From: Phallusia mammillata
Lineage: Eukaryota
Assembly: GCA_965637545.1 (NCBI GenBank)
Contig: OZ281494.1
Span: forward strand, 15,686,001 to 15,750,000
Direction: 5' to 3'
DNA length: 64,000 nt
In this document: positions 47,101-56,849 of the stretch, piece after piece
Position numbering within the stretch: position 1 is the first letter of the stretch
Layout: every line of letters starts with the position of its first letter
Notes under the pieces: model-generated
The model's input: only the letters and a program-made list of their open reading frames with translations
What the model was told of the DNA's origin: nothing
The model's database searches: none
Program-made: the position numbers and the translations under genes

Positions 47101-49460
47101 TAGCCTGGCAAAGCGATGTGGAATGCAACGAACGCTTTGACGTGGCCGGCGCAGGGTTCGCGACCCTCTTGTGATTGACGATGCTTTTCCGCCCAGTCTT
47201 AGTCCTGAGTCAGGGCTCTTACCGTGTGTTGCTGTCTCACGCTTTCAAACTTTGAACTAGCCTGCCCAAAACTGTGCTCTCGGATAAAGTGAGGCGTTTA
47301 GCTGGTGATGATTCACACCACGTTTAACTGACGAGATTTTCAGGTGCGGGCCTAATTAACGCTTTTATGGTTAAAAACGCGGTTTCGTTCAACTGGTTAA
47401 AGACGCGTTACAAAGGAACACTATACACGGACTTAAAAGGTAATTTAATTAAACATGGTGCACTGATGATGACAACAGAGATTGTTGAAACGTCTCCATG
47501 ATATATTCTATATACACCAGTACTTCGGCAGTTATATTTATGATTAAAAGGCGGTACAAATTTTTTAACGAAACAATACGTGGTTTACGCCAGTGAATCC
47601 TCACTAAGGGATTTTGGGATTTTTGTAACAATAAGTGCGTTGGAAGGATCGCGTGTGTCTCTTTGCAGTGCTTTATGTTTTTGCCGAATCTTTTTCTCCG
47701 CCAATAAACTTTTCCAAGTCATGTGGCCGAAAAACACACTAAAAGGGACCAGTCGGACAAAGACAGATGACATAACTTGTGTACCAGCCCAAACAACACA
47801 AGTAAAACGTCGCTATCGGTCAGTTCCGTTCGCGAGCGCACGGTCCCGCCCATTGTGATGCATTAACGCCGTTCACAATGGAGCCGGGAACACCAAATCG
47901 CCTTATCAGAGATGGATGGAAGGCGAACGTGCCCGCGTCATTCCTTCTTATCGACTCTTTGCTTTGTCGCCATCATTTACAAGAGTAGGATCCAGGTGTG
48001 ATTTCACCTGCGTCCGAGTTTGAAGGTGTTTGAGGAGAATTGTTTTTGCGTTTGTTTGATATCAATTCATCACTTTAAAGTTTCGTTCGCGTTTGGAACT
48101 GCTTTTATGTAAGCAGGGTATGAAAATCATTTCTGTAATAGCTCTTAATAACGATAGCAGCATCAAAAAATGGACCAAAATGAAAAAAATGACTGAATTC
48201 TGTGATTTCCTTACCAAAACATTAATTTTTATTGATAGAACCGAAGCATAAAACAGATTTGTTGCCGCCATACAACACTCAAGAAATATATGCTTTTGGT
48301 GAAAACCGAAGCAATGTTTTTTTTCTTTGCGTACATTAGTGAAAAAAGTGTGTTTGAGTGTAAAATCTTGTTTAGATTTGTTTTCTTAACTTACGATTAT
48401 TGATGTTCATGGTGCCTCATTTACCTCGTGTGCAGCAAAAACTCGACTTCTGTCGATTCACTTGTGGTAAAGGACTCGGCTTGAGTTAGGTGACAATAAC
48501 AACGTATTTTGTCCGTCGGTAATAAAATATTTGATCATTGAGTAATCGGTACAGTACGTGTAATTTTTTTTATTTAGGTTTGATTGTTATTAAGTGTGTG
48601 TAAGCCGTAAGGCACTCTTAAATAATGCCAGGTAAGTAAACAATACGGCGGTCCTCAACTATTCCCACAATTACTCGGACTTGACTCGATTTGTGTATTT
48701 TTGAGAGTTTGGCTTTGACTCGCTTGGTAGTAAAGTTGACAAGTAGATCGGGTGTAAGTACTCAACAAAAGTATTTTCGTCAAACGGTTGGAAGTTCTTT
48801 CGGCCCAGTGGCGTTTTCTACGACTCTTTGCCGCGACCTGGCGGATTTCATAAACCCTAACATAGAAAAAACGAAAAACAACGTATACAGATCCACAACG
48901 ACACACCGACTTTGTAAGAATTAGTATCAAATTCATGTTGTGATTGAATCAAAAACAACCAGGCAAATAACACACAAAATTAGGCACTCTGACGCAAAAT
49001 AAAAAAAAGTCAATTATACACATAAATTGCACAAATTACAAGATTATTTAAACAATAAAACAACGCAAAACATCAGTACTAAAACTTCACGCAAAAATTG
49101 TAGTATTCCGACCAAAACGATAAAAAATGTTGGTAATTTACGTATGTTTTTGCATAGTGGTCGAATTTATTAAATGCAATAACAATTGCCAAACAACGCG
49201 TGATCATGTGTGGACTTGCCAAAATTCATTTCCTTCGAAGCAAAAGTGATAGAATTCATTCGAAACGAAAGCGATTACACAAATTGATTTGCAACGTATA
49301 ACAGAAGCAAATTGATTTTAGCAACTAGAGGCACAACACGCACTTCAATAACATTCCGCAAACCTACAATACCCACTGTAGCAAAGAGTTCCAAAAGCAA
49401 ATTAACCGTGAAAAAGCGCAGCAACACTTTTGTGTAGGCTTCGCTTAACCCGTAAAAGTT

Positions 49461-52400
49461 TTATTCTATCAGCGAATGCCTGTACTTTTCAGGTATTGCT
49501 TCCAGTAGGCCTTTACCATCGAGCCACGATTTGCTGTAGAGTCGAGTAAAGTAGCGCTGACCCGTATCACACAAACACGTCACCACTGTGTGTCCAGGTC
49601 CAAGATCACGTGCTATTTGTACCGCTGCGGCCACGTTGAGACCAGATGACGCCCCGAGGTAGAAACCCTCCTCGTGAAGCAACCGAAAAGTCTAAAAACA
49701 AAATAGTACATGTACCTCCTGTTCATAATTAGCCTCGACCTTACCCACTGGAAAATGTCGGTAAGTTTAAAATTAAACTGGGCAAAAATATCGAAAACAA
49801 CTTAGCTGCAAAGACGGGTACAGCATCGCTATTGGAAGTGGCACATCGCGGCATAAAAACACTTGTTCATTTTCACTAAAATTTGCATTCTTAGTTTGGT
49901 TTGACTAGACTAGAGGCACGCCTCGGCATTAGACAAACTTAGATGCCAAACAACAAACGCCAGCACATAACTCGATGTCGGGTATGATACGCAAGACAGC
50001 AATTAAACTAGGAGACCTTGCTCAAAAATGTGCAAAAGATACAAACAAGCTTTTTGAAAAAAAAACGCAGTGTCGAAAACCTTTACATATAAGTTATACG
50101 TTACAAATGAATTGAACCAGTCTGTGTTTTGGGTGTACTACAGTGGTGTAAAAAACGTAAAGTGCATTGGATTGATACAAACAACAAATTTTACCATTTC
50201 AACGGCATCAGTATCTTGTACGCATATTGCCCCATCAATCGGCGCGCCTTGCATATTGGCTGTGACCCTTCCTTGTCCGATACCTTCCGTTATCGAAGAG
50301 CCATCAGACCGCTCTATGCGTCCATTTGTGTACCAGTGATACAGAACACTACCCTTCAAACAAAAGTGTTTTATTAAGACTTTACATAAGACAACACATC
50401 ACACAATCATTAACAAACAATATTAGCCTATAACGAATTAATAAGAATCGTCCGGGTAAATAGACATGGACAATTTCGCATCACGCAGCAAGAAAAAAAA
50501 ATGACAAAAGATTATCAACACTGGAGGAACCAACGTTGAATTTTTTAGTTTTGTATTTCTGTAATGTCAAAATTAACAATAGAACATAAAATTGACGAAA
50601 TACCAAAATAAACAAAATATGGTCTGTGTTTGGTGAACATCTTAGAACAAACAAGGTGGTAATCCGTCGACTTCGTCAGAAAACCAAACAAACACGACTC
50701 CAGTGAGTCACCTAAGGGTCGACTGCATCTATAAACCATCACGTGTGGACAGAAATTTGTTAAACCACAAATGGACGCGGCTTTGATCTTTGCAAGTTAG
50801 CTGAGCCGTGGTGCCAAGTGGCAGTCTCGAAACAGCGTGGCAGGTGCCACTGCGGCACGCCCTGTGACTACTCGAGTACGTCTATCACGTTGTGGGTGAC
50901 TTATCCGCTACTGACCACCCAGAAGCGTAAGAAAGTAAAGTTTTATGAGGTTAAGGTTCCTGACAAAGTATTTGGCGTTTTGAGTTGCTGTGTAGAGTTT
51001 TATCTACCGTCGAGCGACCAGCACAAGCCATGCATCCACGAGGCTTGTGGTTTTAATCACGATTTGAACAAGCATGCTTTCAAAGGTCACACGTTACAGT
51101 CAGGGAGTTCAATAGTGGTTTTCAGAGGTCAGATATTTCGGCATCAAACAATATAGCGTCGCAATCGACGCTTGATGGGAGTCGCAAATCATCTTTTCTC
51201 GCTACACTACTGTTCACGGTTCTAGAATCCAAATGGAACAAAAATGCAAAATACGTCGTTAAACCAAAACAATCCGTGAATCGAAATTTACGATGTTAAG
51301 CTGACACGAAAGATCGCCGTGAAAACAAGTGGTAAATCTGTTATTTAGTAAAATATTAGAAACTTAGCAAAAAATAACTTTTGGTTTTAAAATTGTAAAC
51401 TATGTCAACAATATATGAACTTCTTTATTAAAACTTTCATAACCTTACCTGTGGGTCGGCGACAATCGTTTTAATATTCTGGTTTTTGGTCTTTAAGTAA
51501 GTTGCAACTCCTACAAGGTATGAGTAACTGATTAGCGTACAAAAATGCCAGTCAACACAATTAGGTAAAAAAAAATAAAACATGCACATTTACCAGACAT
51601 GGTTCCTCCAGTACCAGTGCCAAAAGTTACAGCATCAACTTTACCACCTGCAAATAACATACAGCAATATTACAGGAATTTTTGTTCTGTATCTGTCACT
51701 TGCATAAAACTGTTGGTACACAGAGCACAAGTAAGAGTGGGTTTATGCTTCTTGATTTATATTGTTTTGGAAAACAAAAACTTAGTTTTATCAAAAATAT
51801 TTTAAGTGAAAAACGTTGGAAGGTAAACTAGAACACTGAATATAGTCAAGAAACCATCAATGTCACAAAAATATACAGTATTTTTTGTAATGTTCCTACC
51901 TGTTTGCCTCCAAATTTCTGGTCCAGTTGTCTCTATGTGAGCTCTTCTATTTGCTGTATTGTCAAACTGATTAGTCCACACTGCATTTGTAAGGGACTCT
52001 GCATATCGGCGTGCCTAAATTGAATGGAAACAAAAATTATAAAAACACAAAAAGTTTACTGCCTTTTACATGAGCAATTGATTTACCTGATGATTGTAGT
52101 TGTCAGGATTATCAAAGGGAACAGCAGGCACAGGTCTTACATCAGCCCCAAGCACAGAAAGCAATTCAATCTTTTCCTGGAAACAGTTTAATGTTTTATC
52201 AGCGATTACAAAATTTAGAAATTCACTTGAACAAAACTTTTCTGCTGTTTTTGCAATAGCCCAACTAATTTTTTCTGCTGGGTTACAATCAAACCTCGTT
52301 AAATTATGATTTGAAAAACATATTTAGTTATTATGGACTGCTGAGCAGCACACAAATATTTTGAAGATTAGGTTTATTTTCTGCAAAATCGTTAACCTGT

Positions 52401-54540
52401 TTGGTTGTTTGAGTTGAAGTAAACAAAGCTTACTATGAGTAAGGTGTAGTCTAGGGCTGTTATCAAACAAATAATTATTTGATTATTTGAAATTTTTTAT
52501 TTGATTATTTTTACACAATTTCAAATAATCAAATAATGTTTTTCTATGCAGTAAACCTTGATATATGTGCAAAATCAATTTACTTGAAAACATTGGTGAC
52601 ATTTTTATGAAATAGAGGTTACACGAAGCACTGCAACATATGTTTTCAGCTTTCTATTAATGTTCATTAACTCATTCCCCCAAAATTGTTGGACAAAAAA
52701 GCATGACAGTTTACTGTTCATTTCGGTATTAGTTACCCCCAGAATTATTAAAGTTATTCAAGCAAGTGACTAAAATGTTATAAAACATATATATATCACA
52801 ATTCAATTCAGCAAGTATCCAAGAAAAAGCTGATGCAATAAAGAGAAAAAATGCACACGAAAATACATATGGTTTTGCCAAATTACGGAGAGTAACTGAA
52901 GCATGTCTCTTTCTGTAATAATTTATTATTTTAAACAGAAAAAAGATGTAGCCTGGATTTAATTACTAAGAGCTTACAAAATTCGTTTAGTAGCCTAATT
53001 TTAACTGGGATTTTTAATCCTTATTTATTAATAACTCAGGCCTTATGTATCAGGAGTTCTAAATTATTTGAATTTTTTGATTATTTGATTTGAAAGGAAA
53101 AAAAATATTTGATTATTTGAAAAATTAAAAACCTTTATTTGATAACAGCCCTAGTCAGACTACATTTTTATGATTGTTTTGTAATCAAATATATGAGTAC
53201 TTTTAGTAAGCTTGTTTCATTCTGACGAAAATGAGAACCACACATATGACACCCATGTAAATTGAAAAAGACAGGCACTACCAACAAGTTGTTGGCAACA
53301 ACACAAACATATTACCTTGGATTGAGTGTTTGGCATGTAAATAATGCACTTATATCCAAGTGCATTACAAATGTGAGCAAGACCAATGCCTGTGTTGCCA
53401 GCTGTGCCTTCAACAACAGTTCCACCATCTTTTATTAGATTTTTTTCTTGTGCATCCTTCAGAAGGTAAAGGGCAGCCCTATCTTTCACAGATCCTCCAG
53501 GGTTCATAAACTCTGCTTTTACCAAAATGTCACAACCTGAAATATTAAATTGTATATTTCAAACTTTTTTGGGATCTTGTAAAGAGGGCTCATTTATTAT
53601 GCATACCAGTTTCTTTGCTGATTCCATTCAGTTTAATCATTGGTGTGCTAAAATATAATAGAAACATTAATTTATCTAATATTTTTCCATGTTAAATCTT
53701 AGATGAGTTACCTTTGGACTAATAAACATTATGGTAATTTAAAAAAGCAACACCAAGTTTATTGAATGGTCAAAAAGATATTTATTTTATGTTTTTGCAT
53801 TCAAAGACCCCTTGCAAGTTGCAACTATCCCATAGACTCCTTGGGAATGCATTAACCTAGTCTGAAAACCACACTAATCTTGTTTAGGCCTAATGTATGT
53901 TAACCACTAAATCAGTGGCTTGATAATAATCAGTGATATTTTTGTATAAGTTACAAAATTATACACATTTCAGAAATCCAAAATGTCCTTATCAAGTGCA
54001 AAGAAGGACATGACATTCCCGTTTTTTTTTGAAAAGGTTTGAGTAGTTTTAGTCAAGCAGAATTATAAGAAAGGGTAGTGATAATTGATAAACACACTTA
54101 ACTGTACTTCACTTACTTTCCAACTGTTCCATAGAATCCATCCAAAATGGACTGAAATCAAATCATGCCAGATAACTTTTTGTTAATGAAATCATTGGGT
54201 TACATCATACAGTAATTAATATCCTTTTAGCTACTTACATTTGACGTAGAGTAGCATTTTATGAACCCAACACGTGTCACACATTTCCGGCAAACTTGTT
54301 GTGGAAACTGCGCCAATGCCACACGCAACATAACTTTCAACTTTTAAACCTGTACAGTAACAAATACGTACTATACACAAGCTTGTACAAACATGTTTTA
54401 CAACAAAACGTGCAATTAAGTACACAACTCGTTGCACCGCCTTCAAACTGAAAAAGTAGTATCAACCTGACAACTGAGCAAAAGTGACAATGACGTACAA
54501 ACTTATTTCGAATGCGCCAGCAGTTTTTTTGCTGTGTCAT
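49461..54540 (-). CDS. Cys1a: Fungal-type cysteine synthase (O-acyl-serine sulfhydrylase, PLP fold II), 349 aa, 10 exons
   Basis: Exons 54499-54540, 54117-54151, 53607-53647, 53316-53536, 52087-52176, 51900-52014, 51594-51647, 51449-51510, 50195-50353 and 49461-49691 total 1050 nt, phase-consistent. PLP lysine in [48 protein letters not shown]. The pattern resembles S. pombe Cys11 / Aspergillus CysB as recalled. Exon 1 is the least certain. Confidence 0.93.
52452..53153. mobile_element. MITE in a cysteine synthase intron (702 bp)
   Basis: TIRs TAGGGCTGTTATCAAA / TTTGATAACAGCCCTA; TTATTTGA subterminal repeats at both ends; TSD not cleanly resolved. Confidence 0.85.
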
Positions 54541-54993
54541 CGTGTTATCAGCAATCACTAGTTTGCGTAGCAGTCAGCTACTTTACATTCGTCACAACCC
54601 ACAACACATAAAGTTGTCACGGTTTTGGGTGTTTTATCAGTTTATACTTTATACCAATGCACTTCTACAATTTAGGGTAAAGCACCGTTATTACACTTTT
54701 TGTAACATGCCATTAAAACGCTTGTCAAAAATAATTTGGTGACTTTTTGTACAACTTTGAAAAGACCACAAAGTGTTTTACGGCACTGTCGACTCTACTA
54801 CCAATATCTAAATGAATAAACCAAATAGATTATATGCTCTGAGGGTATACGATACGTCATTTTCGGGTATACTTCTTGTAATTAATCATCCATGAAAATC
54901 TCTATTGATGCTCATCCATGCATGCGCGGCTGATTTTTCTCTTGAAAAGTTGTTATTTTTTTAATTCTGGTAAGAGTTTATTAAAATCTTGTC

Positions 54994-56849
54994 ATGGAAG
55001 AACACGAGATTTTTCCATTGCCACCATGCAACAGCAAACAGCCAGATATCATCAACACCTTACTATATAATGGGTCAAAATTCAAAGGGCACCAAAGAAG
55101 TAAAGGAAACTATTACGATGTAGAGGTAAGCCAACTTTGTAAAATTTTGACCATACCATCAGTTTAGATAGTTTATTGGTTAACTTCAATAAGCATTTTT
55201 CAAAAGGGGCATGGCCAAAAATAATGTAAAAAACATTTGGTATTTGTAGCAGTATTTGCACCAATATATCACTTTTGTTGTGGTGTTGGTTGATTGACAA
55301 ACCACTTTGTTTTATGCTAACACAGTTTAGCATAATTTACTCTTTTTCAATACTTAGTTTAGAATAATTTATATGGTGTATTATACACATTACACTAGCA
55401 GTATTCCTTTTTTTAAAGTTATATCGTAGTGGCATCCACATGGTATTTTTTAATGCAGTATGTTGTATTTGCTTGATGTGACTGTGAAACAAAGTTTCTT
55501 TTGAACTTCTGTTTATCTCTCCCTGATGTGGAAAGGCAAGATGTGTGGGGAAATTACCTAATGTATGGACATTTTAATTCATCAGATTTTAAAAATGCAC
55601 ATGGTTAGGTCTAGTGGAGTAAGGATATGGGTCCCTAATTAGGAAAACAAAATAATAAGCCAGGAAATTTTGGTGTATGTGGATTTGGCTTTAATCAAGG
55701 TGTGCACAACCTTTTCATTGAAATGTCAGTCATGTTACAGGGGCTTATCTCACCAAAGGCCACCAGTGTCTTCATGACTTTCGTTTATAAATTGGTGTAG
55801 GATTTTTGTTCTATCCCAAGTAATTGTACCTAAAAGTCTACTTGATTAGTGTCCAACCATATGCATAGATTTAAAAAACTTGCCATTTCACTCTTATCTA
55901 CTTATGATGAACTGAATAACTTGCCATTCACTATTATCTAGTTATGATGCTACCATCTATGGTTTGCATTGACTGTTTGTTTTGTGTTGTTTGCATACAT
56001 GACTAAAAGTCCAGTGTATGTGTAATATTACAAGCCCTTTGAAGCACCACAAAAATTTATTGGGGCTTGTTTTAGAAGCCAAATATGTAGTAAAAAAGTT
56101 ATAAATCAATGTCAGTACATATATTGTAATATATTATTGGATGACCTAATATTGTGCACCTCTGACATTAACTAATATCTATTCACTATTTCTTTCTTGT
56201 TTATTTAAAGTTACTTTTATCTTTAGGTAACTTTGCAACATGTTGACCTCGACAACTCATATGTTTGTGGATATCTAAAAATTAGTGGCCTTACTGAAGA
56301 GTTCCCCACAATGACAACATTTTTTGATGGTGAAATTATAAGTGAGAGATATCCATTTTTGACTAGGAAGTGGGATGCTGATGAAGAGGTTGACATAAGG
56401 CACTGGAAAAAATTCCTGTCATTTTACCAATTTTCCAAGACCTTTAATAGCAGTGGATTTGACTATGCCAATTTAAGAAACAGTGATTATGTTTTCATGA
56501 GATGGAAGGTATGTTTTTTAAATGTTAACAATGTATTTACAGTAAGGATAAAAGCTGTTAACCTTGCCTTTAAATAACAATGCGCTGCGATGGCAAACGT
56601 GCAATGTATTATCACTACCCTTTCTTATAATTATAATGTTAAGCTCTTTTTCAGGAACATTTTCTAGTGCCAAATCACAAGATTGAAAACATACATGGGG
56701 CTTCATTCGCTGGATTTTACTACATTTGTTTCCAAAAGTCGACTGCTACTATTGAAGGATACTACTACTACAGGACATCAGAAATGTTTCAATCCCTTAA
56801 TCTGAGACACTCACCGGAATCAACAATATCTGTTTATCAGTTCAGATGA
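54994..56849 (+). CDS. GID4: Glucose-induced degradation protein 4 homolog (CTLH/GID E3 ligase substrate receptor), 202 aa, 3 coding exons
   Basis: Exons 54994-55125, 56227-56508 and 56655-56849, all phase 0. Motifs [61 protein letters not shown]. Candidate polyA signals ATTAAA 57298-57303 and AATAAA 57502-57507. Confidence 0.96.

What the first reader, a model, noticed from the sequence alone, without database searches (positions are those of the whole stretch)
49461..54540. Intact, intron-rich fungal-type cysteine synthase in a chordate genome
Seen: a complete 349-aa, 10-exon gene retaining the PLP lysine (SVKDR), the substrate loop (TAGNTG) and the phosphate loop (GTGTGGT). Known: vertebrates make cysteine by transsulfuration (CBS/CTH) and lack this enzyme, whereas a fungal-like Cys2 + Cys1a route from serine and sulfide has been reported in corals and other invertebrates. 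Inference: this tunicate keeps a serine + H2S cysteine pathway, or an H2S/cyanide detoxification activity, that the vertebrate lineage lost. The short basic, acid-free N-terminus ([14 protein letters not shown]) may be a mitochondrial targeting signal.
Basis: partly seen in the sequence, partly recalled or inferred. Interest (0 to 1): 0.7.

Follow-up and report, generated by a model that had tools for sequence, protein, structure and literature searches.

The report
Known sea-squirt Cys1a cysteine synthase
This is a real, expressed sea-squirt gene for a fungal-type cysteine-making enzyme (Cys1a), but the same protein is already in UniProt and in a 2022 paper on this pathway in invertebrates, so only the corrected start of the gene is new.

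Summary
The gene is real, intact and transcribed.

The mRNA is trans-spliced to the 16-base ascidian spliced leader at 54350|54349. Translation starts at 54331, and the true first coding exon (54331-54239) adds 31 residues. The protein is therefore 366 aa, not 349.

This 366-aa protein is 365/366 identical to UniProt A0A6F9D973, Phallusia mammillata "Cys1a". That entry is listed in Data S3 of Salazar et al. 2022 (Sci Adv), which reports Cys1a and Cys2 in all animal lineages except vertebrates, arthropods and nematodes.

My own tests agree with the Cys1a assignment:
- It has the Cys1a-type TAGNT asparagine loop.
- Its best NCBIfam family is NF007989.
- It is 61.5% identical to fungal Cysteine synthase 1.
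- AU tests reject a clade with CBS or with CysK/CysM.

The genome also holds an intact Cys2 (MetX-G3c) partner, CBS and three tandem cystathionine gamma-lyase-like genes. It has no detectable sulfite reductase or CysE.

The true N-terminus looks like a mitochondrial presequence. Verdict: already known; low interest.

The parts
54332..54351 (-). SL trans-splice acceptor (AG at 54351-54350) and 18-nt 5'UTR (54349-54332) before the start codon
   Evidence: A contig from run X9 ends at 54351 with 20 loose letters. Their reverse complement is TACGGG followed by the first 14 bases of the 16-base ascidian spliced leader; the last two leader bases (AG) coincide with the genomic acceptor. Leader plus GT donor occurs 3179 times in this genome and 0 times in the control.
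54239..54331 (-). True first coding exon: ATG at 54331, 31 aa (MLRVALAQ...YSTSN), presequence-like
   Evidence: The joint 54151|54239 is seen in RNA contigs from three studies. The translation matches the N-terminus of UniProt A0A6F9D973. It has 5 K/R and 0 D/E.
54117..54151 (-). Coding exon 2 ([12 protein letters not shown]..., start of the GNTP motif)
53607..53647 (-). Coding exon 3
53316..53536 (-). Coding exon 4: PLP lysine (SVKDR) and asparagine loop (TAGNTG)
   Evidence: PALP 87.5 bits. NF007989 125 bits against CysK 86.5 and CBS 84. Junctions confirmed.
52087..52176 (-). Coding exon 5
51900..52014 (-). Coding exon 6
51594..51647 (-). Coding exon 7: PLP phosphate loop GTGTGGT
51449..51510 (-). 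Coding exon 8
50195..50353 (-). Coding exon 9 (second substrate loop region)
   Evidence: NF007989 52.4 bits; no other family matched. Junctions confirmed.
49461..49691 (-). Coding exon 10 with the stop codon (49461-49463). The 3'UTR continues below 49400.
   Evidence: NF007989 76.9 bits against CBS 38. RNA contigs run about 240-260 nt beyond 49400.
54499..54540 (-).
   Evidence: No joint from 54499; depth is zero in bin 54504-54650. Unspliced contigs stop at 54434/54443.
50574..51221 (-). Transcribed single-copy stretch inside intron 8. An alternative acceptor at 51221 joins it to exon 8, and the frame stops after 4 codons.
   Evidence: no Rfam match.

Best explanation
The locus is the single-copy Cys1a gene of the ascidian Phallusia mammillata. 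Cys1a is a fold-type-II PLP enzyme of the fungal 'Cysteine synthase 1' / NF007989 family. Its pre-mRNA has nine cis-introns. The 5' end is made by SL trans-splicing 18 nt before the ATG at 54331, and the product is 366 aa.

Inferred mechanism. Lys59 (in SVKDR) holds PLP as an internal aldimine. An O-acylated serine is supplied by the genome's MetX-G3c enzyme Cys2; this is O-succinylserine in S. pombe and Acropora, while O-acetylserine was the substrate assayed for A. fumigatus Cys1a. The acyl-serine undergoes beta-elimination to an aminoacrylate, and sulfide or another reactive sulfur species adds to it to give L-cysteine.

The 31-residue basic, acid-free N-terminus suggests import into mitochondria, and Cys2 has a similar N-terminus. 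The animal has no sulfite reductase. Sulfide must therefore come from the environment, from microbes or from catabolism, so the route runs beside a complete CBS + cystathionine gamma-lyase transsulfuration route.

Shown: gene structure, transcription, family placement, presence of the partner. Inferred: substrates, compartment and physiological role.
For: - Gene model and motifs.
- All junctions, and the spliced leader, seen in RNA contigs of up to four studies.
- 365/366 identity by eye to UniProt A0A6F9D973, 'Cys1a' of P. mammillata, in Data S3 of PMC9506716.
- NF007989 is the best NCBIfam family for every exon long enough to score.
- Best solved structures are the ~345-aa cysteine synthases 5I7W/5JIS/5JJC, ahead of CBS.
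- 61.5% identity over 338 aa to fungal Cysteine synthase 1.
- The maximum-likelihood tree puts it among Cys1-like proteins. AU tests reject a clade with the genome's own CBS (p=3.8e-5) and with E. coli CysK+CysM (p=3.6e-4).
- The TAGNT loop is the Cys1a/OCBS form; CysK, CysM and CBS have TSGNT.
- Cys2: a multi-exon MetX gene at G000:C2:22579710-22583621 covers MetX profile positions 36-375. It is colinear with Ciona savignyi MetX-G3c H2YKH8 and has GLSA, the Ser-Leu nucleophile and GHDTFLLD.
- No CysE and no NIR_SIR in the genome.
- Acropora Cys1a and Cys2 rescue the S. pombe mutants (PMC9506716).
- A fungal Cys1a is predicted to carry a mitochondrial presequence (preprint).
Against: - No enzyme assay or localisation exists for the ascidian protein.
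- CBS and three CGL-like genes are present, so the animal does not need this route for cysteine.
- With no sulfite reductase, sulfide supply is uncertain.
- The amphipathic-helix score of the N-terminus is only weakly above shuffled sequence (9% of shuffles reach it), and no targeting predictor was available.
- The tree backbone inside the Cys1-like set is poorly resolved. Its Cys1-like rows were chosen by similarity to the query.
- The whole-protein NCBIfam cut-off was not tested, because the joined protein was not submitted to any search tool.
Confidence: 0.8

Rival explanations
1. The enzyme's main role is detoxification or signalling rather than cysteine supply. It would consume H2S or persulfides, or act as a beta-cyanoalanine synthase (cysteine + cyanide), as mitochondrial plant CAS and nematode CYSL-2 do.
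For: Transsulfuration is complete (CBS; three CGL-like genes), so cysteine supply is already covered. The genome has no sulfite reductase. The N-terminus is presequence-like, and mitochondria are where sulfide and cyanide act. The preprint on fungal Cys1a reports broad tolerance of sulfur donors and discusses SQR-derived reactive sulfur species.
Against: Known CAS and CYSL enzymes belong to the CysK/OAS-TL branch; that placement rests on my own knowledge, but the AU test does reject a clade with CysK/CysM. A dedicated serine-activating Cys2 is retained intact, and it is needed only for the synthetic direction. The Acropora orthologues make cysteine in yeast.
Confidence: 0.15
2. It is an O-acetylserine-dependent cystathionine beta-synthase (OCBS-like) that condenses acyl-serine with homocysteine, not sulfide.
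For: According to the preprint, the TAGNT asparagine loop is shared by Cys1a and OCBS enzymes.
Against: The closest relatives are fungal Cysteine synthase 1 and NF007989 proteins, and identity to them is high (61.5%). The orthologous coral enzyme rescues cysteine auxotrophy in a CBS-less yeast. The genome has its own canonical CBS.
Confidence: 0.04
3. It is bacterial or fungal contamination, a recent horizontal transfer, or a silent pseudogene.
For: The best database relatives are fungal and bacterial.
Against: The gene lies inside a 36-Mb chromosome-scale contig next to ordinary animal genes. It has nine spliceosomal introns and is SL trans-spliced, a tunicate mRNA feature. The frame is open and RNA contigs come from four studies. 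Orthologues exist in Ciona, amphioxus and many invertebrates.
Confidence: 0.01

Closest known systems
UniProt A0A6F9D973, Phallusia mammillata Cys1a (Data S3 of Salazar et al. 2022, PMC9506716)
   Same: The same gene product: 366 aa, 365/366 residues identical by eye, including the N-terminal 31 residues.
   Different: One residue differs: Ile52 here, Val52 in UniProt. RNA contigs from four studies show no other letter at that exon, so this is probably an allele. The record is a protein/mRNA entry; the exon-intron structure and the trans-splice site described here are not given in the paper's data.
Fungal Cys1a / 'Cysteine synthase 1' (S. pombe Cys1a, A. fumigatus AfuCys1a, lichen-fungus P0023)
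   Same: 61.5% identity over 338 aa to P0023. Shares the TAGNT loop, the GTGGT phosphate loop and the SVKDR lysine. It is a single PALP domain with a short presequence-like N-terminal extension, and a MetX-type Cys2 partner is present.
   Different: An animal gene with nine introns and SL trans-splicing. The preferred acyl-serine (succinyl or acetyl) is unknown. The host has no sulfate-reduction pathway.
Acropora loripes Acys1a/Acys2 (O-succinylserine pathway in animals)
   Same: The same two-gene pathway. The metazoan Cys1a and MetX-G3c subgroups include tunicates.
   Different: Acropora lost CBS and may depend on this route. Phallusia keeps CBS and CGL. Function was shown by yeast complementation only for the coral genes.
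Bacterial NF007989 (PRK10717) 'cysteine synthase A'; PDB 5I7W, 5JIS, 5JJC
   Same: Best profile and best solved-structure matches for the exons. About 61% identity to the unnamed P0043/P0275 cluster.
   Different: The bacterial proteins lack the N-terminal extension (P0275 starts directly at the conserved GxxGxTPL motif).
Cystathionine beta-synthase (the genome's own CBS at G000:C2:488415-492308)
   Same: The same PALP fold and PLP chemistry.
   Different: CBS has a TSGNT loop and C-terminal regulatory (CBS) domains that this protein lacks. Profile scores are lower. A clade with CBS is rejected.

Membership tests
Cys1a-type cysteine synthase (fungal Cysteine synthase 1 / NF007989) | Fold-type-II PLP domain (PALP) with the Schiff-base lysine in SVKDR and the GTGGT phosphate loop | tested here: met
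   PF00291 hits on exons. SVKDR at residue 55 and GTGTGGT at 191 of the 349-aa numbering.
Cys1a-type cysteine synthase (fungal Cysteine synthase 1 / NF007989) | Asparagine loop reads TAGNT (Ala), as in Cys1a/OCBS, and not TSGNT as in CysK/CysM/CBS (criterion from preprint 10.64898/2026.06.04.730285) | tested here: met
   TAGNTG is present. The genome's own CBS has TSGNTG. Criterion read.
Cys1a-type cysteine synthase (fungal Cysteine synthase 1 / NF007989) | Scores best against, and above the cut-off of, the NF007989 profile | tested here: inconclusive
   NF007989 is the best family for exons 4, 9 and 10 (125, 52 and 77 bits against CysK 86.5, none and 39.5). Four genomic pieces sum to about 316 bits over positions 25-329, against a cut-off of 387. 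The joined protein was not submitted, so the whole-protein cut-off is untested.
Cys1a-type cysteine synthase (fungal Cysteine synthase 1 / NF007989) | Groups with fungal Cys1/Cys1a and apart from CBS, CysK and CysM in a phylogeny | tested here: met
   Local ML tree. AU tests reject a clade with CBS (p=3.8e-5) and with CysK+CysM (p=3.6e-4). The published tree used this very sequence. Caveats: small taxon set, no nematode CYSL, unresolved backbone.
Cys1a-type cysteine synthase (fungal Cysteine synthase 1 / NF007989) | A MetX-G3c serine O-succinyltransferase (Cys2) partner is present in the same genome | tested here: met
   The multi-exon MetX gene on G000:C2 has GLSA, Ser-Leu and GHDTFLLD. It is colinear with Ciona savignyi H2YKH8. 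Its transcription was not tested.
Cys1a-type cysteine synthase (fungal Cysteine synthase 1 / NF007989) | Catalyses acyl-serine + sulfide -> cysteine | not testable with these tools
   Shown only for the coral and fungal orthologues.
Cystathionine beta-synthase | TSGNT loop, C-terminal Bateman (CBS) module, best match to TIGR01137 | tested here: not met
   The protein ends at 366 aa, shortly after the last PALP match. TIGR01137 scores are below NF007989 on every exon. A separate CBS gene exists. The AU test rejects a clade.
CysK/CysM O-acetylserine sulfhydrylase (includes plant CAS and nematode CYSL by my own knowledge) | TSGNT loop, best match to TIGR01139/TIGR01138, CysE-type serine acetyltransferase partner | tested here: not met
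   TAGNT loop. Lower profile scores. No CysE in the genome. The AU test rejects a clade with E. coli CysK+CysM.

The most novel reading that the evidence does not exclude
Both enzymes of the O-succinylserine route (Cys1a, and Cys2 on another chromosome) carry mitochondrial presequences in this chordate. The pair would then work in the matrix mainly as a sink for sulfide or persulfide, and only secondarily as a cysteine source. It would run beside a complete cytosolic transsulfuration route, with an unproductive alternative exon in intron 8 tuning its level.
Probability: 0.25. Interest if true: 0.4.

Novelty: already known. Interest (0 to 1): 0.15.

Why it matters
It bears on whether chordates outside the vertebrates can make cysteine directly from serine and sulfide. 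That was already stated in print in 2022, using this very protein.

This check adds the following:
- A verified genomic gene model: nine introns and a spliced-leader acceptor.
- The correct start codon.
- A corrected, presequence-like N-terminus that makes a mitochondrial location testable.
- The location of the intact Cys2 partner.
- The metabolic context in the same genome: CBS and three CGL-like genes present, sulfite reductase and CysE absent.

These points are useful for annotation and for anyone planning an assay, but they are not a discovery.

Tried and rejected
Rejected. No RNA joint uses its donor, and the mature mRNA starts with the spliced leader at 54349.
- **Other PALP genes as extra cysteine synthases.** The two intronless genes on C7 and one on C1 are Ser/Thr dehydratase-like. 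Only the window locus and CBS match cysteine-synthase profiles.
- **The search for homologous proteins with P0023.** It returned only fungal proteins, so no named animal orthologues were fetched. The listing of cluster members gave almost no names for the closest fragments. The tree therefore lacks named animals and nematode CYSL.
- **tblastn of the local model against the CBS locus.** It found only two exons. The CBS core was instead concatenated from HMM-matched exon stretches, checked by eye against UniProt A0A6F9D8Z1.
- **Rfam scan of the locus.** Nothing found.
- **Amphipathic-moment test of the N-termini.** Weak: 9% of shuffles reach the Cys1a value and 39% reach the Cys2 value.
- **Joined protein.** It was assembled only inside local scripts from window coordinates and used for local blastp and trees. 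It was never typed or sent to database, fold or look-up tools.
Full report
**Observation.** The stretch 49461-54540 holds a minus-strand gene. The frame carries the motifs GNTP, SVKDR, TAGNTG and GTGTGGT. The longer exons match Pfam PALP (PF00291), with exon 4 alone scoring 87.5 bits.

**Correction of the 5' end.** A second open segment at 54343-54230 begins MLRVALAQ....

I laid public RNA contigs from four studies on 49400-54650. Every intron between exons 2-10 appears as a joint with CT..AC ends on the + strand, in up to four runs. The joint 54151|54239 appears in three runs.

One contig ends at 54351 and continues with 20 letters that do not match the locus. Their reverse complement reads TACGGG and then the first 14 bases of the 16-base ascidian spliced leader. 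The leader's final AG coincides with the genomic acceptor. That leader followed by a GT donor occurs 3179 times in this genome and 0 times in the reversed control, including 553-bp tandem arrays.

The mRNA is therefore SL trans-spliced at 54350|54349. Its 5'UTR is the leader plus 18 nt, and the first ATG is at 54331. Because these are assembled contigs, rare isoforms cannot be excluded.

**Identity.** Data S3 of Salazar et al. [quoted passage not shown] I compared its sequence by eye with the printed local translation. It is identical at 365 of 366 positions; the one difference is Ile52 here and Val52 there. The CBS exons of this genome likewise match the paper's P. mammillata CBS entry A0A6F9D8Z1.

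The genome is therefore P. mammillata or something extremely close. Two earlier notes of this scan name the same species, but I did not rely on them. [quoted passage not shown] It also reports that the Acropora genes rescue the S. pombe cys1a and cys2 mutants.

**Independent family tests.**
- *Profiles.* Exon by exon, the best NCBIfam model is NF007989 (PRK10717, 'cysteine synthase A'). Exon 4 scores 125 bits, against 86.5 for CysK and 84 for CBS. Exon 10 scores 77, against 39.5 and 38. Exon 9 scores 52, with no other family matched.
- *Solved structures.* The best matches are the ~345-aa cysteine synthases 5I7W, 5JIS and 5JJC, ahead of CBS.
- *Closest full-length protein.* A search of 1.8 billion representatives with exon 4 gave P0023 as the closest full-length protein. 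P0023 is a lichen-fungus 'Cysteine synthase 1'. It is 61.5% identical over 338 aa to the locally joined model.
- *Tree.* A local maximum-likelihood tree used 21 rows: the window protein, fungal Cys1, unnamed Cys1-like representatives, an alga, the genome's own CBS core, E. coli CysK and CysM, and two Ser/Thr dehydratases as outgroup. It places the window protein among the Cys1-like rows, while CBS, CysK and CysM form a separate branch. AU tests reject a clade with CBS (p=3.8e-5) and with CysK+CysM (p=3.6e-4).
- *Limits of the tree.* The Cys1-like rows were picked by similarity, the backbone is unresolved, and no nematode CYSL or named animal sequences were available.
- *Loop motif.* A 2026 preprint on A. 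fumigatus Cys1a gives TAGNT as the Cys1a/OCBS form of the asparagine loop, against TSGNT in CysK, CysM and CBS. The window protein has TAGNT and the genome's CBS has TSGNT.

**Genomic context of the pathway** (searches of the window's own 240-Mb assembly).
- *Cys1a.* The gene is single-copy. The other strong PALP hits are Ser/Thr dehydratase-like genes.
- *CBS.* A canonical multi-exon gene lies at C2:488415-492308.
- *Cys2.* A multi-exon MetX-family gene lies at about C2:22579710-22583621. Its exons cover positions 36-375 of the 381-position MetX profile in order. They read colinear with, and by eye highly similar to, the published Ciona savignyi MetX-G3c (Cys2) entry H2YKH8. The residues the paper ties to serine O-succinyltransferase activity are present: Gly-Leu-Ser-Ala, the Ser-Leu nucleophile and GHDTFLLD.
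- *Absent.* No CysE-type serine acetyltransferase and no NIR_SIR sulfite reductase were found, although the controls ring.
- *CGL.* Three tandem Cys_Met_Meta_PP (cystathionine gamma-lyase-like) genes lie on C4.

The animal thus has a complete transsulfuration route and, in addition, the two-enzyme serine + sulfide route. It has no way of its own to reduce sulfate to sulfide.

**Mechanism and compartment.** The catalytic scheme is inferred from the family. The PLP-Lys aldimine undergoes transaldimination with acyl-serine. Beta-elimination then gives an aminoacrylate, and sulfide adds to it.

The true N-terminus (31 residues before the conserved core) has five Lys/Arg, no acidic residue and a Ser/Thr-rich end. 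The Cys2 N-terminus is similar. Bacterial relatives lack the extension, while other eukaryotic Cys1a-like sequences have one. The preprint predicts a mitochondrial presequence for the fungal enzyme. My amphipathicity test was weak and no targeting predictor was available, so a mitochondrial location is a reasonable but untested inference.

**Rivals.** A detoxification or signalling role is compatible with the intact CBS/CGL route and with the missing sulfite reductase. It is not compatible with the CysK-branch origin of known cyanoalanine synthases, and it does not explain why Cys2 is kept. An OCBS-like activity shares the TAGNT loop, but the orthologues' behaviour in yeast argues against it. 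Contamination, recent transfer and pseudogene status are excluded by the chromosome-scale context, the nine introns, the trans-splicing and the open frame.

The joined sequence was built only inside local scripts from window coordinates, and was never typed or sent to a database, fold or look-up tool. Whole-protein profile cut-offs, structure prediction and fold search were therefore not done.

**Verdict.** This is a correct sighting of a real gene with a wrong first exon, and an interpretation that matches the literature. The gene product is already in UniProt and in the 2022 Cys1a data set. Novelty: already known. Interest: low. The corrected 5' end, the trans-splice site, the presequence-like N-terminus and the mapped partner gene are minor additions.

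Noticed in passing
window 50574-51221 (minus strand), inside intron 8: A single-copy stretch is covered by RNA contigs in two studies. One contig joins exon 8 (51449) to an alternative acceptor at 51221, and the frame stops after four codons (NREQ*). It may be an unproductive 'poison' exon or a separate RNA. There is no Rfam match. G>A differences occur at 50840 and 50892.
   Followed up: partly
G000:C2:22579710-22583621 (L012:2711-6622, + strand): Intact multi-exon Cys2 (MetX-G3c) gene with a presequence-like N-terminus (MKLKVLYWAAAVSKR...). P. mammillata Cys2 is not among the entries of the 2022 paper's Data S3, which lists only Ciona savignyi for tunicates.
   Followed up: partly
G000:C4:15844309-15870325: Three tandem cystathionine gamma-lyase-like (Cys_Met_Meta_PP) genes within 26 kb.
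   Followed up: no
G000:C7:22524195-22525085 and C7:1958482-1959357 (L001, L002): Two intronless, complete Ser/Thr dehydratase-like ORFs (362 and 339 aa) on a 25-Mb contig. The second passes the NF005292 'threonine/serine dehydratase' cut-off (402 bits against 371). Being intronless with bacterial-type best matches could mean retrogenes or old transfers.
   Followed up: no
window 56233-56574 (+ strand): An exon of a Vac_ImportDeg (GID4/VID24-like) gene (107 bits), the divergently oriented upstream neighbour of Cys1a.
   Followed up: no
G000:C3:11108338-11147465 and genome-wide: Spliced-leader sequence plus GT donor occurs 3179 times, much of it in 553-bp tandem arrays (the SL RNA gene clusters).
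   Followed up: no
window 53607-53647 (exon 3): Codon 52 encodes Ile here and in the RNA contigs of four studies, but Val in UniProt A0A6F9D973. This is probably an allelic difference.
   Followed up: partly
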